Assembly: GCA_051294905.1 (NCBI GenBank)
Contig: CM119381.1
Span: 15,190,001 to 15,254,000 of the forward strand
DNA: 64,000 nucleotides
Origin: Botryllus schlosseri
Lineage: Eukaryota
Direction of reading: 5' to 3'
Shown: piece after piece, positions 3,001 to 23,700 of the stretch
Numbering within the stretch: the first letter of the stretch is position 1
Layout of the letters: every line of letters starts with the position of its first letter
Notes under the pieces: generated by a model
The model's input: the letters and a program-made list of their open reading frames with translations, nothing else
Databases searched by the model: none
Told to the model about the DNA's origin: nothing
Made by a program: the position numbers and the translations under genes

Positions 3001-6000
3001 GCATTTGCTAACGTATTCTCTATTCACGTACAGATGGAGTTGTACAGAATGCAAAGCAACAGCGCCATCGGATCGTTCTTGGATGAAGTCACAAAATGGC
3101 AGAAGAAACTTCAATTGATCGAAGCCGTTTTGGAAGTTTGGATGAGGGTGCAGGAAAAATGGGTGCAACTCGACGATATATACTCAGGTTTTTAGCGAAT
3201 GTCGATTTTTGTAGCTTGGGTTGTGTGCGATATGTGAATTTTCTAATTTAGGAGCGGATGTCCGTACGGCTTTAGCTCATGAGGCTAATATGTTTGCCGT
3301 TATTAGCAAAGAATTCAGACTGATAATGAGAGCCACGGAAAAGAACACCAACGTCTTGCAAAGCTGCTCGAGAAAAGGTGCTTCATATATATTTTTAGAC
3401 ATACTTTACGTCTGCTTTACTGCAATTTTCTGTGTCAACCATGATTTCAAGGTAGTCAATGATATTGCTTTCATACTCTCAATCTTAATTGATATGTAAT
3501 GTGACAGGACTATTTTTTCCATCTGACGACAGCAGTATATTAGACATTAAAAAAAATCAATATTCCAGAGTGACTCGGGATATATTGTTTTGGCAGACGA
3601 ATCCATGTTTATTCTGGTCATCACACTAAAAAAATTTGAGCTATTACCGTCACCCTGAAATTTTGACTTTCATTGTTCCGACGATTTTTTACTGTTTGTC
3701 ACATGACTTCCGGAATTAAACACTCAACCCATCCCACCATCTCATAAATTCGGTCGAATATAACAAATAATAATAATATTATCACTGATTTTTAACTTAT
3801 CTTTGTAAATAAATCGCTATTTCAGGGCTGCTTCCGTTGCTGGAGAAGATGGACATAAAAATGGATCAATGCAGACACGCCCTGCTTGGAAACTTGGAGA
3901 GACGCCGTCAACGATTTCCGCGCTTCTACTTCCTTTCACCGGATGACGTCATGAACATCGTTTGCTATGGCTACGATCTCAACGCCGTCAATAAGTACGT
4001 ACCAATGAATAATAATCGACAATAGCATGCTTGACCATCTATCCTAAACGCAGATACTTGTACAAAATCTTTCCGAACCTGGGAAAGTTGGATTTCGAAG
4101 AGCGGGAGGTTGTGATCGACACGTCACCCAACAAATTAAAACCACCCAGTCCTCACTTGACGAAGCCGGCACCGGAAAAGGCAAATTTCATGGTGAACGG
4201 AGCGGTCAGTTTGGCCGGGGAGAAGCTGGAGTTATCCAAGCCGTTGCCTTATCAAGGGCCAATGTCGCAATGGCTACCGAGGCTGATCCAATCGCTCAAA
4301 TGCTCGCTGCAGGTGCGTTGAGATATTATCGTTTCCGAAAACAAATTAGACAAGGTTTCCATCAATAAATTGCTTACTGATCGGCTGTTTATGATCGAAG
4401 AAGTACTCGAGACTACCCTTAAAAAAGAGATTTAGGTTAAACTTTTGTATAGTGATTTGCCCAGTCCGAGTGTCACCTGTTCAGAGCGTTTTTGGTAAGC
4501 TAACGACTAGAAAAAAGGATCATTACGACCTCATTGCCGATAATAATGACAAAATTTTCCTTACAAAATAAGGAAACAAGTCAAAATAAGGATGAGATAA
4601 TTATATTACATTATACATTTCCCATCAAAATAAGGACAAATCTGATCTGATAAACCTCTGAAACTTAGGAATGTGTCACCGCTGTTGGATAGAACCACAG
4701 ACCTTAGCGTTGATGGCACCACCGAAATCGAATCATTACAATTGATTCTCGTTTATAACGAAAATAATAATCAAACACTTCTGTCACCAGTCTTGCCTCC
4801 ATGAATTAGTCTCGGCGCCACATCGATATTTTCGTAGCGGTTAACACCAGAATTCTTATTTCAGGAGCAATTACATGTAGCTCTCGGATTTGAGCCGCGT
4901 CCGGCTCTGGTAGAGATGGACGTTCGCAGTGCAGGTGCTTCAAAAGTAAGAGTAAGCCGTCCGTCAAGCGCCACGTCGCGTCATTCCGGATCGAACAAAA
5001 GTGTGAAGCCGTCTGAACTCGCTCGCAAGCTGAACAGCGTCAAAGAAAGGGTACTAACGCTTTAAATCAGTGGTTCCTAAAGTGGGTGATGTTGCGTTCA
5101 TGGGTGTAAAAATATGTGTGTACCAGGGGTGGTTTAGGACACGAAAATGCTGGAACCTTCAGTAAATTATATGTAATCAATATAATAATTAATTATATAA
5201 GTATTATGTAACTACATAAGGAGTTAGTAATACCACTTTTTAAATTGAACTCAAATTCCATGATAGACCTTGTGAACTGAAACTCTATTGAGGAAGGTTG
5301 ACATATATTGAACGGATTGTGCAAAATACAGCAAATAAAGTAGGTCATGAAGATAGGTTTTAAAATGGTGGTCGTCTGCTGTCAGGGAAAACAAACCGAT
5401 ACAAAGGATAAATGGAACTTAACAACTAACGACCACACGTACGTAACATAACTATAAACATACTGTCAGTTGAACTAAAAATGGAGGTGACGCCCAATGA
5501 GCACCTGTAAAGGATGAGTCACATGATTCATTATCGTTATATGATTACTATTGCACATTACTGCAGTAACATAATATAATATATAATTAACCGTTTGGTC
5601 CCTCGCTAAGATGATGGAAAAGTGGTTGGACTCATCCCAGCCTACGAAATGTGAATGAGTTGAAATCCGGGAAATCTGCGTCAATTGTATTTGATTATGA
5701 ATTCTCTCAACTTTGTGGCAACTTGGTGATTCAAGTGCATGCAAAAACTTCTTCAAATGACAATATTCAATTTACAAAAATGGTTACTTCAGCATCGAAA
5801 ACTGTCGAAGTAGAAATAGCATGCAAATAAAAAACGCTGGACAAAGTAGGAAAACCTGCTTAATCACTACATAAAATTAGAGTACTTAGACTGATTCTTA
5901 TTGTTGTGAACCCAATTCTGATACATCACTGCTCTTTTTTACAGCCTTCGGAGGTGGCAAATCAGCTTATCGAGAAACTGAGCAGCGTGGTGTCGCCAGA

Positions 6001-8768
6001 AGAAATCAAATGGACGGTGGATAACTGCACTCAAGTCGCGTTGCTGGCGACCTCGATCAAGGTAAGAAGCAAAGTTGTCACATCGACTCTGCAACCTGCT
6101 GCCGACTCAAATTCAAATTCGAATTTTAGATGTCGCAAGATATCGCGAAGGCTGTCGAGTCGCAAGATCAGTTGGACTCCGTGAAAAGCTTGCTGGAGAA
6201 AATCTTGGTCAATCTGGACGGAGCCGTGATTATGCTGAAGGTAGAATCCTGGTTCGACTTTCGTTTCGAGAATTGCTCCGTACGGAACAAAAATGAAGTC
6301 TGAACTATATTACGAATTTGAATTATAGGGTTTGGGCGAATTTCAAGAGAAGGACTCTTAAAACTAATCAACCTATTTGATCATACATCATCATTTACAA
6401 CATTCAATCAAGTAAAATACAACTTTCGACTGCATATTTATTGAAATAGGGTTTGGGCGACGAACGAATGACAAGAATTAAAAGCGCTCAGGACAAGGTC
6501 GCAGAAGCAAAACAAAAGATTTCTGCGATGCAGGGAGCTAACAAAGACATGTCGGATTCTGACTCGAGAGGGGCACCATCTACCAGGTACGCAATAGCCT
6601 TTGTGAACGTTCTGTCGTTTTGTGATCGTCTAAACTGGGGTTTTGACAAATTTTAGATCGCTACTAGAAGACGAAACTGACATGGGCGATAATATGTCTG
6701 TTGATGAAGGCATGGGGGGTGAAGCGGGTATGTTCAGCTTTTCTTTGTGTGAACAAACATTCCACGGTATCAATTTCAAAATGTTTTATTCACCACAGTG
6801 ATTATACTTGTGCACGTTATTGAGATAGGCAGAATTACGATTTTAGATTCAAACTGGACGTTAATCTGGCAATTTTTTCCGAAATAGAATGGATTTGGAT
6901 TTTTTGCCGAAATGACACATGAAAGCGACTATTTGTTTGTTTCCTTCAGTGTTTTAAATGTACTTGGACTCGACGGGCTTCACCATTATACCATAACTAA
7001 GCATAGTATCAATATTAACAAACTTCAATGGATTGCCGAGATGTAGGCCTAATTATAAAATTATCAATGACAGAGAATTTTTTACATTTGATGCGCAAAC
7101 AGGGTCCGAATTGTATGGAGATTCCATTTTAACAAACATGGTTGGACCCATGCATCTGTAATAGATGACCTCACGCTTTTAATATGTGTAAAGTTATTTG
7201 TATGCTTTTCTTGTTTACAGCTCCCATCAACACGATGCAAAGTCTGCTTTTCACAGAGCAGATTCAATCAAGCGGAAAAGCGATTCGAAGGGATACTCTT
7301 GATGTTGATTTGAAAGAAATAATGCCGCAAGTGAGTTCGAACTTTATAACATTCCTCGTACGATTCTGTATTGGAGTGTATTGATATTGATATTGTTACC
7401 AGCACAGTATTTTTAATCAAACCAACTTTGACTGAAAATTGTTTGAACGGTTGGATATCAAGTAGGGTTAAGATTAAATGGCCTGCCGCATATGCAATAA
7501 AACCAACCATCGTATATTTATGCCAGCACATATAAATCAAAAATTTGATTGAAGGAAAACGCCGAACAGCCAGTGATTGTCGCAGATGCGAAGCACGTTT
7601 TGCTCCCGTCTCAAATGCAGAAAATCGCAAATCTCATCATCATCCTGGCACAGCATCGAGACTTCTGCAATCTTCTCATTGAGAAGAAAGGCGCCCTTGA
7701 TCAGGTAACGGTGCAGCCATTCATTTTTATATTTCTCTTTTTCAGAAAAGTATGTGACCTATTTGTAGGGACTGTGATTCCCGTCGATATTTGTCCATTC
7801 ATTTCTTCTGTTGCAATATGCAATGTTTTGTATATAGTAACTACTCAATACTAGGGCTGGGCACAATGATTCGAGTACTTGAATCTGAATCGAGTATTAA
7901 TTGTAATGATTCGAGGCGAGTAGTAAAAGATGAGTTCTTCGAGTACTGAAATTATGCGCTCCTCATCAATAAAAGTTAATTTACTATCGAGAATTATAGT
8001 CTTGATACCATTTTCCACTGAGGCAGCCTTGAAACCTTTATTGGCCGTGTCGCAGCCTACGAGACATAGTACAAAGCTACGAACGTTACTGGAAATAACA
8101 CATTTTCAAAGTCATCATCATCCCACAACATTGTCAACAAGAGCAATGAAATCGGTATGGTCGAAAAATACCAAAGTATCTTTAATGTGACGTATAACAG
8201 GCATTATATTCTTTGTGGTGGGATAAAAGGTACATTTTTAAGCTTTGACATATTATATTCGGTTGTGACGTCATAATGTATGATACTCGAATACTCGACT
8301 CGACTCGAAGCGTTTTACGTGATTCAGAATCGAATCACTCAAGTACTCGGGTTTGCCCAGCCCTACTCAATACTCATGCATGTTACACGCTTCTTTCATG
8401 TAAACTTTGGTTCCCCTAAATAAAAGTGTGTTATATGTTGGATCAATTAATGTAAGATAATGTGGTTTGTTGATTCAAGCTGAGTTTAAATTCAAGACAA
8501 AATCCATATTGCCTATATTATATATATACATGCATAACTATTACATGTAAAAAAACGAATATTTCACGGTATTTCACTTGCAAGTGCATCAAATTGCTAC
8601 ACAGAGACAGATTTGGGTGTTCCGTAATTTTATCGCACTCACTCTTTAGTCCTTCGACTACATGGCAAACATCAAGCATCACTACAACGAAGGCATGATG
8701 GAGGTGTCTGCTCGTGTGATGGATTGGGAGTTTGAATACGGATTTGAATACCAAGGCTCTTGCAAAAG
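1..8768 (+). CDS. Dynein exons 1-18: end of tail and linker (DHC_N2-like) region
   Basis: Exons 1-240, 649-858, 1416-1548, 1613-1732, 1883-2066, 2755-2971, 3034-3187, 3252-3377, 3826-3994, 4054-4312, 4865-5050, 5945-6061, 6130-6240, 6450-6586, 6657-6727, 7221-7330, 7555-7704, 8650-8768. Motifs: LPLVEDLNHPAMRTRHWKQL, WQKKLQLIEAVLEVWMRVQEKWVQLDDIY, RFPRFYFLS, EFEYGFEYQG. Confidence 0.9.
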
Positions 8769-11700
8769 GTGAGGCAGTTATTTTCTCTGTAAGGTGTAAA
8801 AAGTGCATTCATTGGAGTCTATTTCACAGCAAGTATATATCCGACCTGCTAAATTATCTGTACGCTGACTTTTTTAACTGATTTAGTATGTGCTGGGGTG
8901 CCAGTTTGAGTCTGAGAACTTCTGGTTTTTATGCAACTCTTAATTCAAATCACTGGCTTGGAATTCAACATTACACAACAATTACAAATTGGCAGTGAAT
9001 ATAGCACAAAAGCGAATCACTAATTTCATCACCGTGAAAACACAGGGAAGCAGTTACAGTAACTTTGCGAAGTCTTATCAATCGCATCTCATTTACCAGA
9101 GTCGAGGTTCCGGCAGTTGAGAACCTAACGAATCCTCGTTACAGTTTATAAATTCCCAAATTCACCTCCTGTTTTCTAGTCAATTTTGGATCTGCGAAAG
9201 ATTTGTACTAATTTCCGTCCATTTTTACTCTCTCAGATTCGTGATAACGCCAAGTTGCGACAGGACGATTCTGTCCATGTGCCACGCCCTCCACACCAAG
9301 TCTGGTGTCATGCTGTCGCAGAATTCGCTTCTCGACGCGAGCACTACACGTTCCGAAATGGTGTCCGAACTGGCGACACAATTTGGCAGACCATTTTACA
9401 CGGTGGTTGGCACAAGTTTTGTGGACCACTTTATGCTAGGTGAGTTTTCGAGAGATTCATGCAGAGATGCAGATATACAATTGAAATGAACCCGAACTTG
9501 TCAGGACTCTACACTGACATGAAAATTTGTCAAAATTTCATACCACTGACATCATGTTTGGTGATATGGTTGTTGATATAAAATGTTCTTACCAATTCTC
9601 TACTAGTTGTTGACGAAAGTCACCCAAGAATATTCGGGTTTATTTCAATTGTCTATTGAAGTTCTCTACCTCCAAGAAGGGATCAATTTACGATTCACAA
9701 TTTCAGGGGACTTGTTCAAAGGCCTGGCAGAGACCGGCTGTTGGCTTTTTATGGAAAATATCAACAATCTCTCACCGGGAGTGTTATCGGTTGCCGCTCA
9801 GCTGATCGGGAAGGTTTTGGACGCATTACGGTCTGGTCTGACATCGTTAGAATTACAGAACGACGACGTGGCTATCGTGTCGTCTGCTGCGTTCTTTGCG
9901 ACTCTACACAAAAATCAAGAAGACTGTCCGGAAAAGATATTTCTGCCGGTACCGACGACCGTAGGGAGATTGCCGGAATCTTTCTTGAAAAAATTCAGGT
10001 ACTATGACTCGGTGTGGTGGTTAGGGCCAGAAGAATGTTGGTTTTTAAAACTAACACTAATAAAATATTATTTGTGCAATATTCCGTGCTACATTTGATT
10101 TCCCGAGAATAGGGTGCATCTAACAGAGGTAGTCAGTAACGAAGTACCGAAACTATTTTGATGTACTCAAATAGGTTTTTCCTCCTTGCACTATTTGCTT
10201 GCACTACTACAGTTTTGTCCAAATCCAAATCGTTATAAAAACCACATAAAATCAGCGTCACAGTAACTGCTGAACATATTTTAATAATTCTACCTATTTG
10301 TAGTGTCATCAATCATTCTGTGGTACCAGTCTTTGGCCCTAGGTGGGTGAATGACGCATTTGTCCTAGCCGAGACCAAGCCGGTTTGTTTGGTGATCGTG
10401 TCGTGCGGTGCTACTACCTGGCTTTAATACCCAATTCCACAACTCTGAAAAGGGAAAACAGGGATGAATAAACCTCTCTTTTTGTCATTTTCCAGGATTG
10501 TGAACGGAGTTCCACCCAATCACATCCAAGTTCTTCAAATCCAACTTCTGGCTCAAGGCTTCACGCAAGCTAGCGATATCGCTCGAAAAATACGCACACT
10601 CCTCGATTTGGTACAAGGACTGTTCACATGGGAAGCCGGTAACGTTTCGAAGCAATCCAACGCGGACCCGCACGGAGCAATTTCCATGCAGAGTATCGAG
10701 CAGATCATCTCCTCGGCCGGAACAGAATTGGACGAACTGATTCACGTCGAGGCGGAGAAGAAAAAGGCGCAAAAGGAATTGATGGCGAATAAGGTGATTT
10801 GAGCGATTCGCATCAAAGTGGTAGTTGATTTTTCATTGATATATTTCCACCGTAATACGACGCATAGTACCCCTACGGTTCTTAGCCACAACATTTGACC
10901 CATATGTGCGTTACCAGGCGTTTTCTTGACGCCACAAGTTTTATCATAAATGGGGGAATATATTCGAATTCATTTTTGTTGTCTCTTTTAGGAAATATTT
11001 GGCATTGATAAGTGAGTGCTCTGAAAAAGTAGTAGCACTTCTGATTACCAGACATGCACTGATATCGTCCAACATTTACCGACTGAGAATCACTATGCCG
11101 CATCAATTCGGTGTTGGCGACTTCAATCCAGCGATTTTGAAACAGCTACTGTCTTATACATCCACATTTGGTATCTTATGACCAAACCTTTTTATTTGTT
11201 GACTTGTACCATTCATATTCAGACCAAGAAATTTGCCGAACTCTGGAAGTACAGCTCGCTGTCCGAAGGCTCGCGATCGAAGCTGCTGGCAGACAGCAGC
11301 GAAATGAATCCGGCCGAATCTTCTGAAGAAAATGTGAATCAGTCCGCACCAGAAAATGAGTAAGTATTGTTTTCTGTCGATAATTACATTTAGTCTGATT
11401 ATTTGGACTGCGGTTCTATTATTTTTATCCGCTTGAGACCACAATATACAATGCGATACACCAGATAAATGTAATGAACAGATAGGAGGATGTTGTAACA
11501 ACCGAGTGTTTTCTATTGATCTAACATCCACCTTGGTCTATTGGAACTACTAGTATTAATTCCCGTAACAGTGTTCGATCTTGATCTTTTGGCTGTCTTT
11601 CTACAAATGCTTTCGTCGCTCTTTGCATTTTTTTTTCTTGCACAATGTAGACTATATCAGGCTAAATACGGATGAATATCTTAAAATGAGAGGCATTTGC

Positions 11701-14700
11701 TCAAAATAGAATAATACAAGATCATGAACAATAAAATATCAACAGTGATACACAATAGGCTAAAATTGTGATAAATTTCAGTTTAGTCAGGCAATCACGT
11801 CCCAGGAATAACATAAATCCGTTACATCAAGGAATGAACCACTTCCAACACAGTATCTGGTGCATGTGTACATCGAGCATTGCACCTAACAGGATTTTCC
11901 AAAAATGCCGGACAGTGGAGTTGAAAAATAGCAACAGCTTGTCGGCAATGCTACGACTGATCGCTATTTATATTTGCACCCTTTTCCTACTTTTGACGGC
12001 GTGTTGCCCACTTTGGTCTTGAAATAGAAGTAATAGGTAATGCTGGTGATCGGTACTTTGTCATAAGAAACCTGTGACTGGTGGTATGAAACTTGAATGT
12101 TGCCTTCAGGACTACATTCATTGCAGTATAATTTATTTGACTCGAAGTGTTAACGGCACAATAACAAACATATATCCTATAAGAGCTTGTTGGAGGTACA
12201 TTTCTTCAATATGCAATTGAATAACATATTCATATTGAAATGAACCTGAATATTTTCGGCTGACACACGTCAGGGGTAATTGTCAGCAACTAGTAGAGAA
12301 TTGGCAAATAAACAATTAAACATCGTATATCAACATTCATATCACCAAATATGACGTCACCAGATGAAATTTTGAAAAATTGGGTCTAAGAGATCTGGTG
12401 TATTTATAAAAATATAAACCGACATTTAAATGTGAATCATTATGACAAATTATGACGTGACAAATGACAGTATAATTTTAAATATAACACGTCTGAATCA
12501 AATTATACAATTTCCAATACACAAGAAAACATTAGACAGACATATAGCAGTATGCAATAATGAAGTATGCATATTAATAGTTTTAGGAATGTGAAGGAAC
12601 TCCTCTTGCTAGCATAAATCTGGAATCTGTATGTAATCCTAGCTCTCTGTCGCCCCGATTCAAAACCATCAATGCCATCTTGCAATTTTAGTTACATTTC
12701 CCTGGTTAATGAGCTTCCCTGCTGCTTTCAGTCAATCCGGTTTGGAAGAAGACATGGAGACGATGAAAAAGTTCGAAGAGGAAGTGGTGGTGTCGGCCAT
12801 TTGGAAATACGCCAACCCCAGACTGCTTCGGAGCAGTGATCGGAACACGTTCATCACTCTGGTGCAAGACGTGTTCCCGAATGCGGAAGTGAATTTCGGG
12901 GAGGAAAATGAGGAGGAGCACGTCGTTGATCGATGGGTTCCGGAAGACAATACAGAGGTGAGAAGTTGTGTGAACCAGGATTGTAATGACTTGACTTGAT
13001 ACGAGTTATTCTCTTAAAATGTAAAATGACTCGGCTGGTTAGTACTCTCGTATTTCTGTGAAATATATATGCATTATACACATTCGAATTTGCCATTGGT
13101 TCAATAAAGCTAGTACGTCGTGGGGACAGTAAACAACCAAATCAGTGTGGACTTGTTGTTGACATGCGTGACACCCAGTCAATTGGGAAAATTACGCATG
13201 AGAGGACGCACACAAATCCTTTCGGCCTGCGTTATAACGTAGCATCAATACCTCAAATTGCTGCGTGGTTGACATTTTTGATGCAAAACCCTTCATCTTC
13301 AAAGCCGAGATTGTCACATCCCGCTAAAACTTCCGTGGGTAAACTATCTGCATTCACCACGACTTGGATGGTCGAGCCACAAGAAAAAAATCTGACTAAT
13401 CCGACATATTTCTCCACAAATCCAGGTGTCGATACCAATCCACCCCGCCACGACTGAGTTCCCACAGCCTAAGCAGAACTTGAACGAAATCACGGACGAA
13501 AAGGAACGTGCGATCAGCAACGCCATGTCTGACATGAAGCTTTGTCATTCCGCCGCGTTCATGTCGTGCGTCACGCAACTGTTTGACGTAAGGGATGATT
13601 AAAAGATTGCATAGGCCTGCATTTTTCTGTCACTTTGTTTTGAATTTCAGATCTTTTTCTACACGAAAGGGATAATAGTGACAGGTAGATCGGGTTCTGG
13701 AAAATCGACTTGCGTCGACGTGTTTATGGAGGCGCAGAAAAAGCTAGGAAATGAAGCTATCTATGAGAAGGTGACAGCCCTTGAAACTAAAACTAGCAGT
13801 GGTCAAAGTAGTTGGTGTTGCTAACTGCTAGTCACACCGTAAATTTCCGCTTAACTTCAGGTAGAAGTAGCGATTTACAAGATACCGTAATGTTCTATGT
13901 ATTATACGTCCTCCTGTATACTACGCACCCTGAAAATGGCATGTAGATTCTTGGAAAAAGCATGTACCCATGTAAAGTACGCACCCTGCACGAGCAGTAC
14001 ATGTATAGTACATGCGTAAATGCCATACAAGCTTCTCCTGTTGATAAGTTACCAGCGATGGTTATATTTTAGTATTAGCCGAAACCGACTACGCACGTTG
14101 AAGTCTGCTCGTTGTGATTCGATGTCATTCTGTTTTACGTTGTCACTGTTGAACCATGATGACGTAACGATCGCTAATCATACACTTAACGACATTGTCT
14201 CTAAACGATGGAGAGATAGGAGCCAAAGCATGCGAGGCGCAAGTCGCGAAAGTTCAGGCCAGCGACGATATCTTGCTCATCAGGCCTATTGTAGATGCGA
14301 TTGTTCAAGCCTGTTACAGATGCGACTGTTTAGGCCAGCGATGATATATTGCGCACCTGGCCTGTTGTAGATACGATTATTCAGACCTGTTGTTGACGTG
14401 ATAAATCAGGCAAGCGAGGATTGCGCGCGCGCACATCAATCAATGTTACTCTGATAGAAATATTTCACTTTGTTCTTATGCCTGCAAAATTGTTCAAGTA
14501 GTGTCTTAGCTAGGTTGGTTTAAGTCATGGTAAGCAGATATTTTCCTGAATCAGATCATTTGAAGCGAGTCATGCCGTGAAATTAGATGATCACAGGCTT
14601 CTATCATTATACTTCCAATGCCGTAAAACTACCACACAGTCTCGATGGACACCTTCTTTTGTTCCAGATTTTTGTCAACGCCCTCGATTCGCCGAATCAA

Positions 14701-17700
14701 TTATTTGGATTTTACGACTCCGATAACAGAGAATGGAAAGATGGACTCATGCAACATCTCATCAGGCCGCACTGTTCCAGCTCCTCTACGTCCGAGGTAT
14801 GAGATACTAAATTAAGCACCAAATTTCCTCATATTCACTCCTGAAATGACGGATGCAATGCTAGCAATATCACAGAATATGAATTTGCAGTAATGATTTT
14901 GTATTTGAACAGGCTATTTGTCTGTTTATGTTTCGGTAGAATATCATTTCTTGATCACTCTTAACAAGCCAGCTTGAAATGCCATAATGCCGGTAACCAC
15001 TACCGTCCGGCATACATTCATTTCATACGGCAACTGCATATTCATTTGCAGATTCAGATATCTACCTCCACACCCTTCTTTCCACCTAGAGAAATCCTAA
15101 ATCACAGTATATGTCATCTTCTCTCTCAGTGCCTACCCAGACTTGATGTCGAAAAATATATTTGAAAACTGCCGTCTCCATCGTCCCAGTACCTACTTCA
15201 AATATGTATGTATGAAGATTTGTGGCGCAGGCGTATATATTTTTAAGCCTAAATGGATTTTTTGGATTTTAGTTTCATCTTATTCACGTCTAATTCTAAG
15301 TTTAAATTCAAATTGCCGCAACGGCTCAAATTCTTCGACAAGTCACAATACATGTACAAATACAAATCTAGCTGAAAACAATTCCTAAATCGTAATTCGT
15401 TTTGAGACCAACAGAAATCTTCAAATCCGTTTTCAAAAATTCAAACTCCAACGCAATTCTTATTGCTCGATCCTTGCTCATCATAAATAACATAGTACAT
15501 TTAAAATATCAGGGCGCACATCAGCAAGTCGTTTTGCAAGTGGACGGGATGTTGGATGTGGGAAACAGCGACATCTTGCTGCAGCTCGTGCGAAGCTCCA
15601 GATTGTTCGGGTCGGCGCACGACTCCCTTCCTCGCGACCTAATACTGCCTAACAACGAAAGGCTCCGCTTGCCGGTCGGACTACAAGTGATTTGGGAATT
15701 GGAGTCGTTGGCTGATCTAGCGCCCAACGTAGTCTCGGAACTGGGACTGCTTGTATTGGGAAGCAAGGGTGAGTGGTTTTGTAATTCGTTTTGTATATGT
15801 GCTATTTCTAGCGGAAGTAGAGTATAAAAGTCTGCTAAGAACTGGTCAAAAATTGTATCAGCAAAAATTACAATATCTTGTTCATATATAGGCCTGCTCC
15901 AAGTTTCATGTTGCTATCAGGCTATACAAAAATTCATAAAACATGCTCTAGCATTCATACCCTGTTTCTAATATCTCCTAATGTAAATACTGAATAAACA
16001 GTATGTTATTATTTGTAATGTCCGATTTTTCAGAAGTTACGTGGAAAGTGCATTTGTCCAGATGGACGGAGCAATTACCGGCAACGACACGCGCGTGGCT
16101 GACGGAACTCCTCGACAAATACTTCCCGAAAATCACCTCCCACTTCGCCAAAGCCACCGCGCCCAGCCACCTGACACGTGGCCAAGTCGACAAGTCCCAC
16201 GTTCTCACGCAAGCGGTCCGAACCACCGTGGAGTCCATGACGGTCACCTTTTGCCAGTTAATGGACTGCATGTTGTCTGCGGATTTACGTGGAGATGAAT
16301 ACGAAAGATTTGTCGGATATTCCGCGTTTTGGGCTTTTGGCGGGACACTTGAGTGTGACAGCCGGGACAAGTTTGTGGCATGGTGGAAGGACCAGTGGCC
16401 CACTTTTTTCCCGGACAGGTACGACCCTTGGTTTGTGTTCGTGGACTCGGAAACAAAAGATTTTGCCCACTGGCCTGACCACCTTCCCCAATTTGGTGGT
16501 TTCGCCCATGCAGCCGGACACCTAGCCGGGTCGTCCGCAGCCCCGCCTAGCCACGACGAACAGCAGAGACTTTTGCAGCAAGATGAGGTGTTTGTACACA
16601 CCCCGGAGTCGGCTCAAATGAACCACATCCTGGGCATGTTGACCGACGCCAGTCGACCGGTTATGTTGGTAGGGCCGGCAGGGTGTGGTAAAACTGCCCT
16701 GGTCCGAGAGAGAGTGAATAACGTCAGCTCGGGCGAGGTCGCTGAAGTGTTGAGCCTTTTTGTCAACTGTAACCGATTGACTGAGGCCGGTGGTTTGTGG
16801 AATCGCGTGTCTGGCTACTTGGAATGGAAGCACAGCGACACTTACAGTCCACGGGGGAATAAAAAGCTGTTGTGCGTCGTCGATGATATCAATTTGTCAA
16901 AGCCGATCGGTAATTATTTATTTATTTGCTAGTATTTAATAACATTTTGAATTTTTTTTTTTTCGTTTCAGCTGGAGGCCGGAATCACTTGCAGTCGTCG
17001 TGCGAAATCATTCGTCAGCATCTCGACATTGGTGGCGTGAGGAACATCGCCTCGTTTAAATGGCAACAGGTAGTTCGATCACATGCAATTCGATGTGTTG
17101 TACTCTCTCACGGCCTGCGTTTGTGTAATATCGGCACTGAGCCATATTTTGACATCGTCAAGTGTTAGCTATCGGATACTACGGCATCAATTATGAAGGA
17201 GGCATTCTTCTTCCTGTTGATGGCTTCTCCAAAAGGGTTACTGTGGCAAATCGGTCTCTGCAAGCTCCTTGTCGTGATATGTGCCTCTGTTGTTCCCACT
17301 TTTTTCCTCTTTTGCAACAATTACGTATCTGGAGAGACTTTTTGCGATCCAGAATTTTAATACTCATTTTCATGATACCTTAATAATGAAAATGTATTGA
17401 AACCTGAACCTTTGGAGCTGACACTCTACAGCGGCAATTGTCAGCAAATGAGGAATTTTAAAAAACTGGAATACCTACATTGCATACAACTACATTGCAT
17501 ACAACTAATTGTGAAGACATAGAAACAAATACAATAGATATGGATTTAGGCACTTTAGAAAATCTCCCCTCATTATATTCGGAATTCTGAACTAAATGCT
17601 TGCCAATAGAAGAGTAAAGAGTTCATAGCCATGGCCAAGCTTCGGGTTTTCATATGTTTTCATTATTAATACTAGATTAAAATGTGTACATATCTCTTAT

Positions 17701-20700
17701 ACAACCTTCCTCTCTTCCATCTAAATGCCTTGGGCATTCCGAGCATGTTCTAAACAAGAGATTGCTTGGTAAAAATGCATACTGCGCTGAATTTTTTCAT
17801 GTTTTATACTGCTGCCACAGTGCACAGACTTTGTATTCAATTTCAGTCGCATTAGCCTTTTACTTAAATATGTTTGCAGGTTAGCAACGTCACGTACATC
17901 GCAACGGCGAACCCATCGCTGGCCTGTTCTGCATGCCCTCTCACGCAGAGGTTCATTCGTCTCTTTTCGTTATTCGCTTTGCCGTTTCCGTCTGTCGAAG
18001 CTCAAAAATCCATATTCAGGTTCGCAATAATTCAGTCGTCATGCCAAACACACTTCACTAACGTCTTTTTTACATTGTAGCGCAATGTTGGGAAGTCATT
18101 TCCTTCGTACATTCGGATCGAGCCAGCTGTCTTCGAGTAATTTAGCGGAAATATGGGCCGAAAAGCCGCTAGAAGTATGAAAAACCTTGCGTTTCTAGCA
18201 ACTCAAATTTGATCCGTTATGCGTGTGACATTCAGAATCTGCTGCATCACATCGCGATGGTGACTATCGAATTGCAAGAGCGTCTACGGCACATGTACCT
18301 GCCCATTCCTGAAAGGGCGCATTACCTGTTCACTCTCAACGACCTCGATAGGATATTCCGCAACCTATTGCTTTCCTTGCAAAAAGACTGTGATCACCAA
18401 GATCTGTTACTGCTCTGGCGTCATGAATGCGATTGGGCTTACGGCTGGCGGATGGTAGGTTTGAGAATACACTTCTTTCACTTATTATCTGCAACATTAC
18501 CTATTTCTCTACTCAATAGTTGTTACCCATTATGTAACTTCAAACATCCTATTTTGAGCTTTGATAAGGATACAAATATTTCTTACATAATTCGACTTGT
18601 CCTTTGCAGTACTCGCCATATTTCGTCATATTCACTATTCACTGTTATAGCTTCAATGTACGCAATATAGATCCAATTACTCCTAACAGCTGCAGTAGAC
18701 TTGACGATCACCAGATTACTGCACCTATATACTATGCATATGAATCTACCAATATTCACTTTATATCACAATTCATTTGTACACTTCATTCAGCGTACTG
18801 ATCAAATCAATCTTTTCTGTGTTGTGTAATAGTTCGGAGATTTGCGAGGATGAATAAATTGAACACAATCGCGTTTGCGTTTGTAGATTTCCGACGTCGA
18901 CTTAGAAAGATACCATCAAGCATTCGATACATCCGTCAGGAAGCATTTGACTGATAACCGGCATCTGCCGTGTGTTATCCCAGTGAGGCAGCCGCTGTTT
19001 AGCAATGTGCGCGAATTGGACAGCGGATTTGTGACTGCTGGCAGGTATGTGATAATATTAATCAGATGTATAACTGATTGTGGGCAAATTTACTTTCACC
19101 ATTGATGGATATTTGAAGCTTGGATAATTTCTGATCTTTTCTCCTGAATATTTCTCACATTTCATCCTGTCTGTAATGTGTGCCCGCTACTAATATCCGG
19201 CAAGGTTATCACTGTGATTTTTACGCTTATTTTGAAGATACCAAGGTCGCACTTCGCAGAGTAGTGGCCGTGGATTGAAATCTGGCGCTCCTACTAACAT
19301 GGGTGATTATTACAAACCCGTTACGGATATAGCAGACGTGCGAAGGCTACTTGCGGAAGCCGTCAAGGTATTGTGATATTAGTCCATATGCATCATATGG
19401 AAAGTACAATGATATGAAAAAAATATCAGCTAAGGCAAAGGGACATTTGAATAATCTTGCTAACGGTACTCGTGAGTACGACTGGAACCATGAGTACGGT
19501 TGAGACCATTCTCTCCAGAGCGTTTCAATTACATTTGGTACTCAAACTTACTTCAAATATGTCATAGTTATAGTCGGTATTCCAGCATGTAGCTTAGCTG
19601 CCTGTAATCTTTGTGGCTTGCGAAATGTTGCAAGAAATAGGTAGTGTGAGATGGCACTGCTTTCAACCGACTCTGTTATCAACTTATGTATCTCAACTGT
19701 ACCTATCTAATCAACGGTATTGCAAACTATTTGGCTGTGGCATTAATACATTTTTCATAGAAAGTATAATTCGATCACGCTTAACTGTACAAGTAAAGTT
19801 AACGGACCAGCAAGAATGAAAATCAATACACAGATGCTAACTTGGGTATGGGGAAGTCTAGTGCAAAGCATTAGATGAGATTTCCAGGCAAATACTTTTA
19901 CTCATTTTATTCAAGCGTGGGCTTTGGCATCCGAGAAACTTGCTCCGGTTTTATTCAACCCAAACGCGATAATTACACAAAGCTGTAAATCTATTCATAT
20001 ACTCCAGGTTTACTCAAACAGACCAATTAGTTACTTGATGCTCGCGTGGTGTTACATTAGACTACTTTGCAACATTTTTTCAAGCCAAATATTTAGCATT
20101 TCCAACATCACCATTGTTGTGAATTTGGTTGCCCCGTCTTTGACCTGCAACTTGTTTCCTTTCAGGAATACAACAAGGTCAATGTCGGAATGAATTTAAG
20201 CCTGTACAACGACGCCATCACCATGGTATGCCGGCTTGTCAGGATCATGCAATCTCCGCATAAAACCGGGCATACCTTGCTTTTTGGTGATGGTGCACCC
20301 ATGATTGCAAGACTTCTTGTCAACTTGGGTAAAATCACATCCTAAGTTGAAGTATACCTGTGGTAATAATAATTTGTGTTTATCAGCGGCTCATCTTGGC
20401 GGATTCGGTGTAAAAAGCTTGCGTCCGGCTATCACGAATAATGAAGAAGAGGTGATTGACTCGGACGAAGCGCGCCTTTCTCAGTTCAAAGAGTTCATGG
20501 TGTCGTTGTACAATCAAACTGGGGTGAAAGGGGAGAAGGTGCTGCTGTTTCTTAGCGATGACAGGTGGGTGATAAACTGATAATGTGTAACGGATTGAGG
20601 GATTCATTTTATTAATCTTTATTTCCCTCGTTAAACGTTGTTCAATTCTTTTTTCTGATTTTCTGATCCCGTTTTCTGTACGTATTCTATCTATTTCTGC

Positions 20701-23700
20701 AACCAGATGTGAATGATCAGGCGGCAAATATCACTGTCTACAACAGCGGTTTTGAAAGTGGGCAAAATTACCAAATCTTCAGGCTTTACTTTCCAATCTC
20801 TTGTGATGTTCGATTTTGGATTGATGGATAGTCATACTGAAGCGATAAGATCCAATGCCTTTTCACCTCACCAAATTAGGTCTTCACATTGAGAGATTTA
20901 AATTAGTTTTTACTTCAGTTATTGGAGGATACGTGGGATAGGAACTGTTTGAGGTCGTGATTAATATGTGTACTTGTGTATGTCAATAGTATAATTTTAT
21001 CACTTTCCTTTAAATACTATTTTCTGGGTACACGGTTTCCCAGTCTTCAGTTATTAACAGCCATAAATATTCCTGAGCTCCGCTGCAATTTTGACGATTT
21101 TTAGAATCCTCACTCACGAGTGCTTGGCCGTTTTGGACGAACTCATTCGACACGGGGCGATATCCCACTCGTTTACGAGCGACGAACAAACCACCATCGC
21201 CAATTCCGTTCGTAGCGAAGTCACCGCGGCGGGGCTGACGTATTCCCGGGATGCAGCCTGGAATTTCTTCCAGAGCACAGTCATGAAAAACTTGAGGATT
21301 GTGCTCGTTTGCTCGGAGACAGGTGAGTGGTTCATCAAAATAAAATAAATTAGAAGATTCTACTAAATGTTCATGTCAATTCAACTCCAAATTCTCCATC
21401 AAACCACGAAATAACAAAACAATGCAAACTTCTATGAGCTGGACGTCAGCCATTCCTGTAGTGTCATTACTTTGATTGATAAGTCTTATAATTCTCTTAA
21501 CCCCTGTAAGCTACACTAGAGATCCACAGAATAAGGGCTTTGGATTGTAACCAGACAGGAATCCAGTAGGTCTTTCTGAAATGGGATTGGATCAGGATTC
21601 ATATTTTTGTCGGATCTGGATCCAGTACACGAAATTGACATTCTGTTTGGTTATTTCGATGTTTTGTATGAGTTTGAACTCAGCTGACTTTGGCATTCCA
21701 TAACAATTTAGAAGAATCCTTGTTAACAAACAAACAGGATCCAGTTTGGGATCGTGATTCCATATTAACTGAACAGCATTGGATTCGGATCCTGAAAAAC
21801 CATGATCCGTACATCTCTACAGTGCAAATCTTTTGCGTTTGCAGGAAAAAGCTTCATGGCCAAAAGCCTGGAGTTCCCCGCGCTCTTCAACCACTTCAAC
21901 ATGATCGCGATGCGGCCCTGGTCTCACGAGCAGCTGGTCGAAGTCACCCTCTACCACATTTCCCACACCGACGCCAACGGCCGCCGAAAATGCTGCCTCC
22001 AGGAAGAAAACGAAAGCGATAAGCTCGCTGGACGAAACCGTAGGCGCCTTGGCAAGAAATGGATGGAAAATGCGGCCCATCTCTTGGCCAACATGCACAT
22101 CGCCGTCAGGCAGAAGCCGGAAAACAATAACTACAAGTATAAGCATGGTTTTCATAACGTCTTTTTTTTCTAAGATTGGAATGGTGTTATAAAACTGCGT
22201 TGTCCTTGTTCATAAGATTTGTCATTGTTTTTGATTCCTGTTCTTAGTTTCTCTTATTTATAGACCGGATGACAATGGGGCCATGATGGACTGGGCAAAA
22301 GTGATGACATAACCTTTTTTTAATCATCAGCTTTCAAAATAGGCCGGTGAACAGACGTTAAGTGTGAAAGTGTTGAAAATTTTAGTTTGTTTAGTAGTGT
22401 TTACCAATTTGTTGGTTTGGCTGCTCAGACTTGAGTTTTTGACTATTCTTAGTTTTTGATCCATTTCAATGTTAGCTATGAGTATAAGGCTTGTTTTGTG
22501 CCTATTTCCGCTGCCAATTTGACGCAATCACTTTTGTTTTCAAGGGTGTTCGGACACGTTTGCAACTACGCGTTTGAAAAACTGGTGCAACGCTTCGTGC
22601 ATGTCTTCTGTGCCAAACGCCGTTCCGTGCATGAGTATCAAGGTGTTACGGCTCATGCTCTGATGAATATTGATAAGGAAAATGCGATCGCAGAGTCGTT
22701 GCAAAAAGAATTGGACAGGGAAAAACAGGTGACATCTGACTTCATTATGGGTTGGGATGTTGGAGATCGAAATAATTCAAAATCTGGAATTTTGTAAAGG
22801 GGAAGAAGGGCAGGTCAAAAATAAAATTCAATGCATTACTCGACAAATAGTATCTCACTACTCGACCCGAATCATTACAATTAACACTCGATTTTGATTT
22901 GATTACTCGAATAATTTTGCCCACTCACGAATGATAAGTGTATAATTATATGGTTGCTATGTAAGTTTGACAGGAAGTCAGTAACGTACTTGCATTTCAC
23001 GGTGTGATGCTTGCAAGACAAATTTCAATCAGGATTCTTGTATACGGTATCAGTCGTATCAGGTTTTAGCGGATAACTCATGAAAAATTCCAGCCACATA
23101 TTTCGTATGACCCAGACTCACTCCAGATATTCATGTGGCATAGCCCATTTTAGCATTACTCAGCTCTATTAATTCACAGAAAAACTGTACTCATTTTAAA
23201 GCCCTTGAAATTCGCCATGATTGCAGGTATTGGAAGAACACAAAATTGGGACTACCCAACTTCTTGCTCAAATCGGACAAGATATGGTGATCACCGAGCA
23301 GCAGGTGAATATATCTTACGCACACTTATTTGCTCGCAACCCACCTCACAAATGGTGTTTTGTAGGTGATGGCCGTAAAACAGCAAATTCGAAAAATAAG
23401 GCACTTGAAGAAATATCAACCCAAGTATAAGCATGCTCATGAGAAAGCTGTTTTTAAAGCTGCCGCCATCGTGAAGGATACCAAAAATATTGTGAACGAT
23501 ATCGACCATCAGGTAAATAAAATTGGCAATGATAAACAAGCGTTGAATATATTTGTACTCGTGTACGGTTATTGCGAATGGGAAGTTATCGGCTGTATGT
23601 TTGCGATAATTTCAAGGGTCTCGCGGAACTCAGATTGGTACAGAAACCGGATAACGACGTGGAAGACTTGATGGCTTGCATCATCATGATCTTGAAAACG

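What the first reader, a model, noticed from the sequence alone, without database searches (positions are those of the whole stretch)
9237..15768. Intact dynein gene whose AAA1 motor site has lost all five catalytic elements
Seen in sequence: the AAA1 Walker A position (canonical GPAGTGKT) reads SQNSLLDASTTRS (~9301-9357). Walker B DEFNR reads ENINN (9754-9768), the sensor-I TMNP reads TLHK (9901-9912), and the sensor-II GLRA reads SMQS (~10683-10694). The arginine finger supplied by AAA2 (canonical VSRCG) reads VSELG (Glu at 15738-15740). Established: AAA1 hydrolysis drives the dynein power stroke. Inference: concerted loss in both cis and trans, in an ~80-exon frame with no stops or frameshifts, points to a selected non-motile 'pseudo-dynein' (scaffold, brake, tether or regulator), not a pseudogene. 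Vertebrate DNHD1 is a known divergent dynein-like gene, but orthology is untested here.
Basis: partly seen in the sequence, partly recalled or inferred. Interest (0 to 1): 0.85.

Follow-up and report, generated by a model that had tools for sequence, protein, structure and literature searches.

The report
Dynein paralogue with dead motor site
This is an intact sea-squirt gene for a dynein heavy chain whose main ATP-burning site has been completely lost; it belongs to an old, little-studied animal family of outer-arm dynein copies in which that site is broken in every member, so it most likely acts as a non-motor part of the sperm or cilium skeleton.

Summary

The gene is not decaying. In the window it splices into 73 exons (1-50865, + strand) and 4,398 codons. 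There are no internal stops and all 72 introns are GT-AG. It is 60% identical over 4,374 residues to the Styela clava orthologue, so the genome is a tunicate.

It is probably neither DNHD1 nor the recently described DNAHX. It fits Kollmar's (2016) metazoan "class-13" dynein, an ancient copy of the outer-arm beta chain (DNAH9/11/17):
- a beta-like tail (in the gar orthologue);
- a longer AAA5;
- a low-complexity C-terminal extension.

The AAA1 site is dead across the family. The Walker B glutamate is missing in every member examined, from corals to frogs. The P-loop then decays lineage by lineage and is gone in tunicates.

Constraint is inverted relative to working dyneins. AAA1 is the least conserved part. 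Linker, AAA3, AAA4 and stalk/microtubule-binding domain are the most conserved.

Non-motile dyneins are already known, so this is a new member with a useful family-level insight. Interest is moderate. The scan had not found this on other DNA.

The parts
1..50865 (+). The part of the dynein heavy chain gene that lies in the window. It runs from the linker to the stop codon: 73 exons, 4,398 codons. The tail-encoding 5' third lies upstream of the window.
   Evidence: Family-HMM exon map. Splice-junction resolution. Exon-chaining models. Colinear tblastn of the Styela orthologue. Curated model with 0 internal stops and 72/72 GT-AG introns.
8650..8768 (+). Exon at the linker/AAA1 boundary (...FEYGFEYQGSCKR).
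   Evidence: HMM hit E = 7e-07. Junction 8768|9237. Styela HSP. The acceptor scores weakly on my PWM.
9237..9439 (+). AAA1 exon carrying the former Walker A. QNSLLDAS at 9319-9342 replaces GPAGTGKT: no Gly-rich loop, and Lys becomes Ala.
9707..9998 (+). AAA1 exon carrying the former Walker B (ENINN, 9754-9768; the catalytic Glu is Asn) and sensor-I (TLHK, 9901-9912; the Asn is His). A family-specific loop insertion follows sensor-I.
   Evidence: Pfam AAA_6 E = 3.5e-11. PDB alignments..
10496..10793 (+). AAA1 small-domain exon carrying the former sensor-II (SMQS, 10683-10694; the Arg is Gln), preceded by a family-specific insertion.
11223..11359 (+). Insertion exon inside the AAA1 small domain (TKKFAELWKYSS..., partly low complexity).
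   Evidence: Frame and splice logic from the sequence. Selected by the exon-chaining model. Conserved in Styela, Clavelina and Phallusia.
12732..12957 (+). Exon for the rest of the AAA1 small domain.
13426..13770 (+). Two exons (13426-13587 and 13651-13770) entering AAA2. The AAA2 Walker A GRSGSGKS is intact at 13684-13707.
14668..14796 (+). AAA2 exon.
15513..15768 (+). AAA2 exon carrying the former arginine finger towards AAA1. VSELG is at 15732-15746 and the Glu codon at 15738-15740.
16034..16909 (+). Large exon covering the AAA2 small and AAA3 large domains. The AAA3 Walker A GPAGCGKT (16672-16695) and Walker B VVDDINL (16876-16896) are both intact.
20166..20328 (+). AAA4 exon with a dead P-loop. 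GDGAPMIAR (20286-20312) replaces GVGGSGKQS.
23227..30354 (+). Stalk coiled coil and microtubule-binding domain: exons 23227-23304, 23366-23512, 23617-23805, 23866-23956 and 29963-30354, with a 6-kb intron. This is among the best-conserved parts of the protein and carries no family-wide insertion.
   Evidence: Per-exon identity to Styela is 69-100%. Domain identity. Insertion map.
30685..31896 (+). Two acidic low-complexity exons (30685-30849 and 31619-31896). They form a ~167-aa insertion after coiled-coil 2, in the AAA4-AAA5 connector.
39004..41039 (+). AAA5 exons carrying acidic insertions (the 'longer AAA5').
49948..50865 (+). Last two exons (49948-50209 and 50576-50865). They give a Ser-rich low-complexity C-terminal extension of about 150 aa beyond the canonical end. 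The stop codon is at 50863-50865.

Best explanation
The window holds the motor-encoding two thirds of an intact tunicate gene for a 'class-13' dynein heavy chain (Kollmar 2016). This is an ancient metazoan paralogue of the outer-arm beta heavy chain (DNAH9/11/17).

Shown:
- The AAA1 site, which in every working dynein binds and hydrolyses the ATP that drives the linker swing, has none of its five catalytic elements here. The P-loop glycines, Lys and Thr are gone. The Walker B Glu is Asn. The sensor-I Asn is His. The sensor-II Arg is Gln. The AAA2 Arg finger is Glu.
- This is a family trait. The Walker B Glu is absent in all members examined, from corals to frogs. The P-loop then decays independently in different lineages and has vanished in tunicates.
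- The P-loops of AAA2 and AAA3 are kept in every member. The AAA4 P-loop is dead in every member.
- Constraint is inverted relative to working dyneins. AAA1 is the least conserved domain. Linker, AAA3, AAA4 and stalk/MTBD are the most conserved.

Inferred:
- The protein cannot perform an AAA1-driven power stroke.
- Through its beta-like tail it joins an outer-arm-like complex with intermediate and light chains and a partner heavy chain.
- With its conserved stalk and microtubule-binding domain it still contacts a microtubule.
- It therefore acts as a static tether, brake or assembly/transport scaffold in sperm flagella or cilia, possibly modulated by nucleotide at AAA3.
For: Motifs and coordinates.

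Dynein identity: Pfam AAA_6 and matches to solved dyneins.

Intactness:
- 51 colinear homology-supported exon cores, most with junctions that resolve to frame-keeping GT-AG sites.
- A curated model of 73 exons and 4,398 codons with no internal stop.
- One BLASTP alignment at 60% identity over 4,374 aa to Styela clava.

Family: the closest relatives are 5,200-6,100-aa proteins annotated 'dynein beta chain-like'. They come from cnidarians, molluscs, an annelid, a brachiopod, a nemertean, echinoderms, a hemichordate, amphioxus, tunicates, non-teleost fish and amphibians. The family is monophyletic with 100% SH-aLRT support.

Outer-arm-beta origin:
- The gar orthologue's motor matches DNAH9, Chlamydomonas beta and DNAH17 at 1e-136 to 1e-129, against 1e-75 to 1e-78 for DNAH5/8.
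- Its tail matches Chlamydomonas beta at 5e-144, against 1e-29 to 1e-41 for DNAH5/8.

Class-13 traits described in PMC5100056 are met: a longer AAA5 and a low-complexity C-terminal extension.

Family-wide death of AAA1 and AAA4, with AAA2 and AAA3 kept.

Inverted constraint:
- Window vs Styela: AAA1L 52%, AAA1S 44%, linker 71%, AAA3 72%, AAA4 75%, stalk region 69%.
- Canonical outer-arm beta, fish vs Clavelina: AAA1L 85%, the highest of all domains.

A canonical outer-arm beta chain with GPAGTGKT coexists in a tunicate (Clavelina P0327).
Against: - No expression or protein data exist for this gene.
- Loss of motility is inferred from motifs only.
- Membership of Kollmar's class 13 rests on described traits. 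I had no reference class-13 sequence and made no tree with class-3, class-12 or class-13 references.
- The tail is outside the window, so the beta-like tail was tested only on the gar orthologue.
- The exon model between 5050 and 8650 and at the very 3' end is less certain.
- No dN/dS was computed. The nearest available relative is too distant, at 60% protein identity.
- AAA3 keeps its Walker A and B motifs (as in canonical beta chains), so some nucleotide-dependent behaviour cannot be excluded.
Confidence: 0.8

Rival explanations
1. The gene is an orthologue of DNAHX, the non-motile dynein heavy chain found by cryo-EM in sea-urchin sperm (Chai et al. 2025 preprint). On this view, what I call class 13 and DNAHX are one and the same family.
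For: - Unusual length is the same: DNAHX has 5,272 aa and family members here have 5,200-6,100 aa.
- The reported taxonomic range is very similar: aquatic invertebrates, non-teleost 'bony fish' and frogs, with none in mammals.
- The S. purpuratus member has Val at the last Walker A position and Ser at the sensor-I Pro position. DNAHX has the same (V2221, S2322), at residue numbers only ~13-15 apart.
- One family member (Phallusia) is also auto-named 'DNAH8-like'.
Against: - DNAHX is described as closest to DNAH8/outer-arm alpha. This family is closer to outer-arm beta by more than 50 orders of magnitude, in both tail and motor.
- DNAHX keeps a Walker B motif, binds ATP and shows only Thr-to-Val in Walker A. 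The S. purpuratus member here reads GSNLSGRV and FNNLAH.
[quoted passage not shown] The S. purpuratus member of this family has 99 and 101, because of insertions found in every member aligned.
- DNAHX's hallmark is a folded insert between H6 and H7 of AAA4S, before the stalk. It is absent family-wide here.
- DNAHX has stalk and MTBD insertions. Here the stalk and MTBD are compact and highly conserved.
- Kollmar lists two separate outer-arm-derived metazoan classes: class 12 with an alpha-like tail and an aberrant stalk, and class 13 with a beta-like tail.
Confidence: 0.15
2. The gene is the orthologue of vertebrate DNHD1 (Kollmar class 11), as the first reader suggested might be the case.
For: DNHD1 is also a divergent dynein with a poorly conserved AAA1 that lacks the Walker B catalytic residues and has disordered insertions.
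Against: - Kollmar separates DNHD1 (class 11, present in human) from classes 12 and 13 (absent in human). Sea urchin has all three.
- This family has strong, full-length similarity to outer-arm beta chains.
- No mammalian protein appeared among the relatives in three searches, although amphibian and fish members did.
Confidence: 0.03
3. The gene is a decaying pseudogene, or a gene-model artefact, whose AAA1 exons have drifted.
For: - AAA1 is the least conserved domain and its motifs are all lost.
- The Styela orthologue is flagged 'LOW QUALITY PROTEIN' by NCBI.
- The window's branch in the tree is long, 1.02.
Against: - 13,197 nt of coding sequence in 73 exons with no stop or frameshift and only canonical splice sites.
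- 60% identity to Styela along the whole length, including 52% in AAA1L.
- The same state is kept in orthologues across Metazoa.
Confidence: 0.02
4. The protein is still a motor, driven from another site (for example AAA3, which keeps Walker A and B) or by a partner heavy chain, so 'pseudo-dynein' overstates the case.
For: - The AAA3 Walker A and B motifs and the AAA2 Walker A are conserved in all members.
- Linker, stalk and MTBD are strongly conserved. These are the parts a force-transmitting element needs.
Against: - In all studied dyneins AAA1 hydrolysis is required for the power stroke. This is established knowledge and is restated in the DNAHX preprint.
- The AAA3 Walker B is DD, as in canonical outer-arm beta chains, where AAA3 is regulatory. 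That reading of AAA3 is my own knowledge.
- AAA4 is dead as well.
Confidence: 0.05

Closest known systems
Class-13 dynein heavy chains (DHC13) of Kollmar 2016, Mol Biol Evol 33:3249 (PMC5100056)
   Same: - Restricted to metazoans and absent in human.
- The N-terminal tail resembles class 4, the outer-arm beta chains.
- AAA5 is longer.
- There is a low-complexity C-terminal extension with no conservation across homologues.
- It is a bona fide intact gene.
   Different: No defining trait was tested and failed. [quoted passage not shown] The family-wide dead AAA1 and AAA4, the inverted conservation pattern and the total P-loop loss in tunicates are not described there. I could not compare against its reference sequences.
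DNAHX, non-motile dynein heavy chain of sea-urchin sperm (Chai et al. 2025, bioRxiv 10.1101/2025.01.18.633724); in my reading probably Kollmar's class 12
   Same: - An outer-arm-derived, over-long heavy chain of more than 5,200 aa with many disordered insertions.
- Degenerate AAA1 motifs that vary between species.
- A similar taxonomic range.
- Presumed to be non-motile.
   Different: - DNAHX is DNAH8/alpha-like, keeps Walker B and still binds ATP.
- It has canonical spacing between the AAA1 motifs.
- It has a folded AAA4S insert that locks the C-terminal cap, and a disrupted stalk/MTBD.
- This family is beta-like and has no Walker B Glu in any member.
- It has insertions around sensor-I and sensor-II and no family-wide AAA4S insert.
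- Its stalk and MTBD are compact and strongly conserved.
DNHD1 (Kollmar class 11), vertebrate 'orphan' dynein needed for sperm flagella
   Same: A divergent dynein heavy chain whose AAA1 lacks the Walker B catalytic residues, yet which is functional. This shows that catalytically dead dyneins can be essential.
   Different: It is a different class and is present in mammals. In the cited papers it shows very low similarity to well-known heavy chains. This family aligns end to end with outer-arm beta chains and was not found in mammals.
Canonical outer-arm beta heavy chains (DNAH9/DNAH11/DNAH17, Chlamydomonas beta; Kollmar class 4-beta)
   Same: - They are the best-matching solved structures for both tail and motor.
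- The domain order is the same.
- The AAA3 Walker B is of the same DD type.
- AAA2 and AAA3 P-loops are present.
   Different: - Only 23-26% identical.
- All AAA1 catalytic elements and the AAA4 P-loop are lost.
- Seven or more family-specific insertions.
- In the canonical chains AAA1L is the best-conserved domain (85% fish vs tunicate). Here it is among the worst.

Membership tests
Dynein heavy chain | Linker, six AAA modules, a stalk/MTBD and a C-terminal region in the canonical order | tested here: met
   Pfam AAA_6 on the AAA1 exons. Colinear family-HMM hits from the linker to AAA6. Matches to solved dyneins. Alignment to DNAH11 residues 1164-4417.
Working (motile) dynein | AAA1 with Walker A GxxGxGK[ST], Walker B DE, sensor-I Asn, sensor-II Arg and the AAA2 Arg finger | tested here: not met
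   All five are substituted: QNSLLDAS, ENINN, TLHK, SMQS and VSELG. No alternative P-loop exon exists in the window.
Kollmar class-13 dynein | N-terminal tail homologous to class 4 (outer-arm beta), not class 3 | tested here: met
   Tested on the gar orthologue, because the tail lies outside the window. Residues 1-1600 match Chlamydomonas beta at 5e-144, Tetrahymena beta at 1e-126 and DNAH9/17 at 1e-109 and 1e-107. DNAH5/8 score 1e-29 and 1e-41.
Kollmar class-13 dynein | AAA5 longer than in other classes | tested here: met
   AAA5 spans 595 aa in the window, 583 in gar and 651 in oyster, against 450 in DNAH11. An insertion of 44-149 aa at DNAH11 position ~3679 is present in all members aligned.
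Kollmar class-13 dynein | Unique low-complexity C-terminal extension, not conserved between homologues | tested here: met
   The window has about 150 aa of Ser-rich sequence past the canonical end. Bilaterian members have 144-721 aa; the two corals have 0-16.
Kollmar class-13 dynein | Metazoan-specific, absent in human, present in sea urchin | tested here: met
   All family hits are metazoan, including S. purpuratus XP_011660868. No amniote or teleost was seen. Absence is only as good as the word-limited searches. A Chromosphaera protein is sister to the family.
Kollmar class-13 dynein | Groups with reference DHC13 sequences in a motor-domain tree | not testable with these tools
DNAHX (Chai et al. 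2025) | Closest canonical relative is outer-arm alpha (DNAH5/DNAH8) | tested here: not met
   DNAH9/17 and Chlamydomonas beta score far above DNAH5/8 for both motor and tail.
DNAHX (Chai et al. 2025) | Folded pre-sensor-II insert (beta-hairpin plus helix) between H6 and H7 of AAA4S, conserved across DNAHX | tested here: not met
   There is no family-wide insertion between AAA4L and coiled-coil 1; the stalk is H7/H8. Only tunicates and the window have a 16-22-aa charged insertion there. Its fold was not tested.
DNAHX (Chai et al. 2025) | [quoted passage not shown] | tested here: not met
   The Walker B Glu is absent in all members. The sea-urchin member has spacing of 99 and 101.
DNAHX (Chai et al. 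2025) | Insertions in stalk CC1/CC2 and in the MTBD (pre-H3, H5) | tested here: not met
   There is no family-wide insertion of 8 aa or more between DNAH11 positions 3030 and 3385. The stalk/MTBD exons are 69-100% identical to Styela.
DNHD1 (class 11) | Orthology to vertebrate DNHD1 | not tested
   No DNHD1 sequence was in hand. The indirect evidence is against it.

The most novel reading that the evidence does not exclude
The class-13 heavy chain is the unidentified second heavy chain of 'dynein-X', the two-headed complex that DNAHX forms in sea-urchin sperm.
- Kollmar predicted from the tails that class 12 (alpha-like) and class 13 (beta-like) pair up like the two outer-arm chains.
- The preprint describes the unknown partner as having a normal extended stalk and no AAA4S insert. 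That is what this family looks like.
- If so, dynein-X would be a complete, ancient, catalytically dead copy of the outer dynein arm: both heads unable to stroke, but one head still able to bind microtubules.
- It would be kept in animals with free-spawned sperm and lost in amniotes and teleosts.
Probability: 0.25. Interest if true: 0.75.

Novelty: new member of a known kind. Interest (0 to 1): 0.5.

Why it matters
Dynein research treats AAA1 hydrolysis as the engine of every dynein. A family of full-length, strongly conserved heavy chains has kept its tail, linker, AAA3, stalk and microtubule-binding domain for over half a billion years with AAA1 switched off. That shows the dynein architecture has a second, non-motor use.

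The family was catalogued in 2016, but its ATP sites were not examined. A different dead dynein, DNAHX, was found by cryo-EM in 2025 with an unidentified partner chain.

Linking these threads gives a concrete candidate partner that can be tested quickly. It also gives a natural series of progressive P-loop decay, from intact in corals to gone in tunicates. That series can be used to ask what nucleotide binding at AAA1 contributes to folding and assembly, as distinct from motility.

Tried and rejected
1. Rejected on indirect grounds: class 11 versus class 13, beta-like similarity and no mammalian hits. No direct alignment was possible.

2. DNAHX identity. I held this for a while because of the matching length and taxonomic range. 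After seeing the S. purpuratus member share Val and Ser at two AAA1 positions I reconsidered it. I rejected it as the main reading because of beta versus alpha affinity, the missing Walker B, the different motif spacing, the absence of a family-wide AAA4S insert and the intact stalk. It is kept as a 0.15 rival.

3. Retrieving XP_041462850 (L. variegatus DNAHX). A search seeded with the S. purpuratus member found no Lytechinus protein. No DNAHX chain appeared among solved structures.

4. DNA of the nearest fragment (P0001, Logan contig) for a substitution-rate test. The sample file was too large and no DNA was returned. dN/dS was therefore not attempted. At 60% protein identity to Styela, synonymous sites would be saturated anyway.

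5. My first exon-chaining run over-called tiny exons. I raised the intron penalty, scored the models against the family HMM and then corrected two places with the Styela alignment: 8650-8768 replaces 8023-8084, and 18081-18174 plus 18236-18454 replace 18199-18454.

6. I first read the ~167-aa acidic insertion as lying in the MTBD. Checking the exons showed it lies after coiled-coil 2, in the AAA4-AAA5 connector, and the MTBD itself is compact.

7. Long ORFs in introns and downstream of the gene have no Pfam match, and the window holds no tRNA genes.

8. Structure prediction was not run. The spliced window protein has no reference that the tool would accept.

Full report
**What is in the sequence**

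Translating the + strand at the stated coordinates gives three exons:
- FVITPSCDRTILSMCHALHTKSGVMLSQNSLLDASTTRSEMVSELATQFGRPFYTVVGTSFVDHFML;
- DLFKGLAETGCWLFMENINNLSPGVLSV...AAFFATLHKNQ...;
- IVNGVPPNH...HGAISMQSIEQIISSAG....

These are plainly the AAA1 module of a dynein heavy chain. Exon 9707-9998 hits Pfam AAA_6, the 'hydrolytic ATP binding site of dynein motor region', at E = 3.5e-11. It also aligns to DNAH2 and to Tetrahymena and Chlamydomonas outer-arm chains in the Protein Data Bank.

Mapping the motifs through my spliced model gives the following:
- SQNSLLDASTTRS at 9316-9354;
- ENINN at 9754-9768;
- TLHK at 9901-9912;
- SMQS at 10683-10694;
- VSELG at 15732-15746, with the Glu codon at 15738-15740.

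**Is the gene intact?**

I built a profile from eight relatives and searched all stop-free + strand pieces of the window. This gave 51 colinear exon cores running from the linker to AAA6. Most neighbouring pairs could be joined by one clearly best GT-AG intron that keeps the frame and the profile coordinates continuous.

The finding's limits, 9237 and 15768, are true exon ends. Between 10793 and 12732 there is one more exon, 11223-11359. It is needed for the frame and is conserved in three other tunicates.

The eleven exons from 8650 to 16909 give 939 residues without a stop.

I then built a small exon-chaining model: splice-site matrices and codon log-odds trained on the confident exons, with the family profile as a bonus. 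I corrected it in two places with the Styela orthologue. The result is:
- 73 exons from 1 to 50865;
- 13,197 nt and 4,398 codons plus a stop;
- no internal stop;
- 72 of 72 introns GT-AG.

The model aligns to the Styela clava protein in one BLASTP segment of 4,374 residues at 60% identity. The gene's 5' third, which encodes the tail, lies upstream of the window.

No sequence able to encode a P-loop lies in the introns around the AAA1 exons. The only true GxxGxGK[ST] motifs on the + strand are those of AAA2 (13684-13707) and AAA3 (16672-16695). A pseudogene or an alternative-exon rescue is therefore very unlikely.

**Which family?**

An exhaustive HMMER search with the large AAA2S/AAA3L exon found only nine proteins below 1e-30. 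They are over-long heavy chains from Saccoglossus, Macrostomum, lungfish, newt and gar, plus fragments. Most named ones are auto-annotated 'dynein beta chain-like' or left uncharacterised.

Further searches added corals, bivalves, gastropods, an annelid, a brachiopod, a nemertean, starfish, crinoids, S. purpuratus, amphioxus, three ascidians, sturgeon and many amphibians. Lengths are 5,200-6,100 aa. No amniote or teleost appeared.

Members are 31-60% identical to the window protein but only 23-26% identical to DNAH11. In a maximum-likelihood tree the family, including the window, is monophyletic with 100% SH-aLRT support on a long stem. The window sits on a long terminal branch.

The window protein is closest to Styela (59%), then Clavelina and Phallusia (45-46%), so the genome is a tunicate.

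**Origin and class**

The gar orthologue's motor matches DNAH9, Chlamydomonas beta and DNAH17 at 1e-136 to 1e-129. DNAH5 and DNAH8 score 1e-75 and 1e-78. Its tail matches Chlamydomonas beta at 5e-144, against 1e-29 to 1e-41 for DNAH5/8.

Kollmar (2016, PMC5100056) defined three extra metazoan classes:
- Class 11 is DNHD1.
- Class 12 has a tail like class 3 (DNAH5/8) and an aberrant stalk.
- Class 13 has a tail like class 4 (DNAH9/11/17), a longer AAA5 and a low-complexity C-terminal extension.

Classes 12 and 13 are present in sea urchin and absent in human.

The window protein and its relatives show the class-13 traits:
- AAA5 is 583-651 aa against 450 aa in DNAH11.
- The C-terminal extension is 144-721 aa in bilaterians, and about 150 Ser-rich residues here.

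Kollmar states that the ATP sites were not analysed. I could not place the gene against his reference sequences, so class-13 membership is very probable but not proven.

**Not DNAHX, probably**

A 2025 preprint describes DNAHX, a 5,272-aa non-motile heavy chain from sea-urchin sperm with a similar taxonomic range. I considered identity seriously. The S. purpuratus member of the present family even shares Val at the end of Walker A and Ser at the sensor-I proline position.

However, the two differ on several points:
- DNAHX is reported as DNAH8/alpha-like, keeps a Walker B motif and binds ATP. The sea-urchin member here reads GSNLSGRV and FNNLAH.
- In DNAHX the three AAA1 motifs are spaced 101 and 71 residues apart, exactly as in DNAH8. 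The sea-urchin member here has 99 and 101, because of insertions present in every member aligned.
- DNAHX has a folded insert between H6 and H7 of AAA4S. That position lies before the stalk, because the stalk is H7/H8. This family has no common insertion there.
- DNAHX has disrupted stalk and MTBD regions. Here the stalk and MTBD are compact and among the best-conserved exons.

DNAHX fits Kollmar's class 12 better; that assignment is my inference. I leave a 0.15 probability that the two are the same family.

**The AAA1 site across the family**

- The Walker B catalytic Glu is absent in every member, corals included.
- Walker A decays by lineage:
  - intact in corals (GEFGTGKT);
  - Gly-Lys kept in amphioxus, the annelid, molluscs and vertebrates;
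  - Lys lost in echinoderms and Saccoglossus;
  - motif completely gone in the three ascidians and in the window.
- The sensor-I loop carries a 10-18-aa insertion in all members, and the motif is lost.
- The sensor-II Arg survives only in S. purpuratus.
- The AAA2 Arg finger survives only in some echinoderms and amphioxus, and possibly in Macrostomum and newt.
- The AAA2 and AAA3 Walker A motifs and the AAA3 Walker B are kept in all members.
- The AAA4 P-loop is replaced in the members aligned by a loop of the GEGCP type (AEGCP/AEGNP in oyster and Macrostomum, GDGAP in the window) with no Lys.

So hydrolysis at AAA1 was lost once, before the split of cnidarians and bilaterians. Nucleotide binding was then lost repeatedly. 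The gene in this window is at the far end of that series.

**Pattern of constraint**

| Domain | Window vs Styela | Canonical outer-arm beta, fish vs Clavelina |
|---|---|---|
| linker | 71% | 55% |
| AAA1L | 52% | 85% |
| AAA1S | 44% | 67% |
| AAA2 | 55% | 69% |
| AAA3 | 72% | 53% |
| AAA4 | 75% | 56% |
| stalk region | 69% | 55% |
| AAA5 | 61% | 62% |
| AAA6+C | 53% | 59% |

In the canonical chain AAA1L is the most conserved domain and AAA3, AAA4 and the stalk are the least. The order is reversed in this family, and the same holds for gar versus oyster. AAA1 is still far from neutral, so it is kept as a structural module. Selection is concentrated on the linker, AAA3/AAA4 and the microtubule-binding stalk. 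A canonical outer-arm beta chain with all motifs coexists in Clavelina, so this gene is an extra paralogue and not a replacement.

**How it most likely works**

- Shown: an intact, conserved, beta-derived heavy chain with no AAA1 catalytic element.
- Established knowledge: AAA1 hydrolysis drives the linker swing.
- Inferred: there is no self-driven power stroke. The beta-like tail docks it with intermediate and light chains and a partner heavy chain in an outer-arm-like complex. The conserved stalk and MTBD still bind a microtubule. Nucleotide at AAA2/AAA3 serves structural or regulatory roles.

The likeliest roles are a static or regulated cross-bridge (tether or brake) or an assembly/transport scaffold in sperm flagella.

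Kollmar predicted a class-12/class-13 heterodimer. The DNAHX preprint reports a heterodimer ('dynein-X') whose second head has a normal stalk and no AAA4S insert and remains unidentified. This family fits that description. I give the pairing about one chance in four.

**Verdict**

The gene is one more member of a family catalogued in 2016, and catalytically dead dyneins (DNHD1, DNAHX) are already known, so novelty is limited. What appears to be new is the family-level picture:
- AAA1 and AAA4 dead in every member;
- AAA2 and AAA3 kept;
- inverted constraint;
- stepwise P-loop decay ending in tunicates;
- the candidate link to dynein-X.

Noticed in passing
window 20286-20312 (exon 20166-20328): The AAA4 P-loop is also dead: GDGAPMIAR replaces GVGGSGKQS. 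In the other family members aligned it is a loop of the GEGCP type (AEGCP/AEGNP in oyster and Macrostomum) without Lys, so this loss is as old as the AAA1 Walker B loss.
   Followed up: yes
window 21845-22136: A charged insertion of 16-22 aa lies in the AAA4 small domain before coiled-coil 1. It is found only in the window and in Clavelina and Phallusia (Styela was not in that alignment). It lies roughly where DNAHX carries its folded pre-sensor-II insert, which could be convergent. Its fold was not tested.
   Followed up: partly
P0025 (Chromosphaera perkinsii, 4,745 aa): An ichthyosporean heavy chain is sister to the whole family with 100% support. It keeps Walker A, sensor-II and the Arg finger but has already lost Walker B (ICKEVGL). 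It lacks nearly all the family insertions. It may be a pre-metazoan stage of the same lineage, although Kollmar lists class 13 as metazoan-only.
   Followed up: partly
window 19238-19367 and its flanks (AAA3-AAA4 connector): A family-wide insertion of about 20-30 aa with a conserved signature, QPxFS...G[LI]VTAG. It sits in the connector that binds Lis1 in cytoplasmic dynein. Its conserved length suggests a folded element.
   Followed up: no
window 23957-29962: A 6-kb intron, by far the longest in the gene (the median is about 420 nt), splits the end of the microtubule-binding domain from coiled-coil 2. One long ORF inside it (26952-27407) has no Pfam match.
   Followed up: partly
window 43022-43045: A G....GKT string (GNERSGKT) lies inside a low-complexity part of exon 42928-43153. 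It matches only the loose form of the P-loop pattern and is most likely chance.
   Followed up: no
window 50866-64000: Nothing recognisable lies downstream of the stop codon. The long ORFs have no Pfam hit and there are no tRNA genes.
   Followed up: partly
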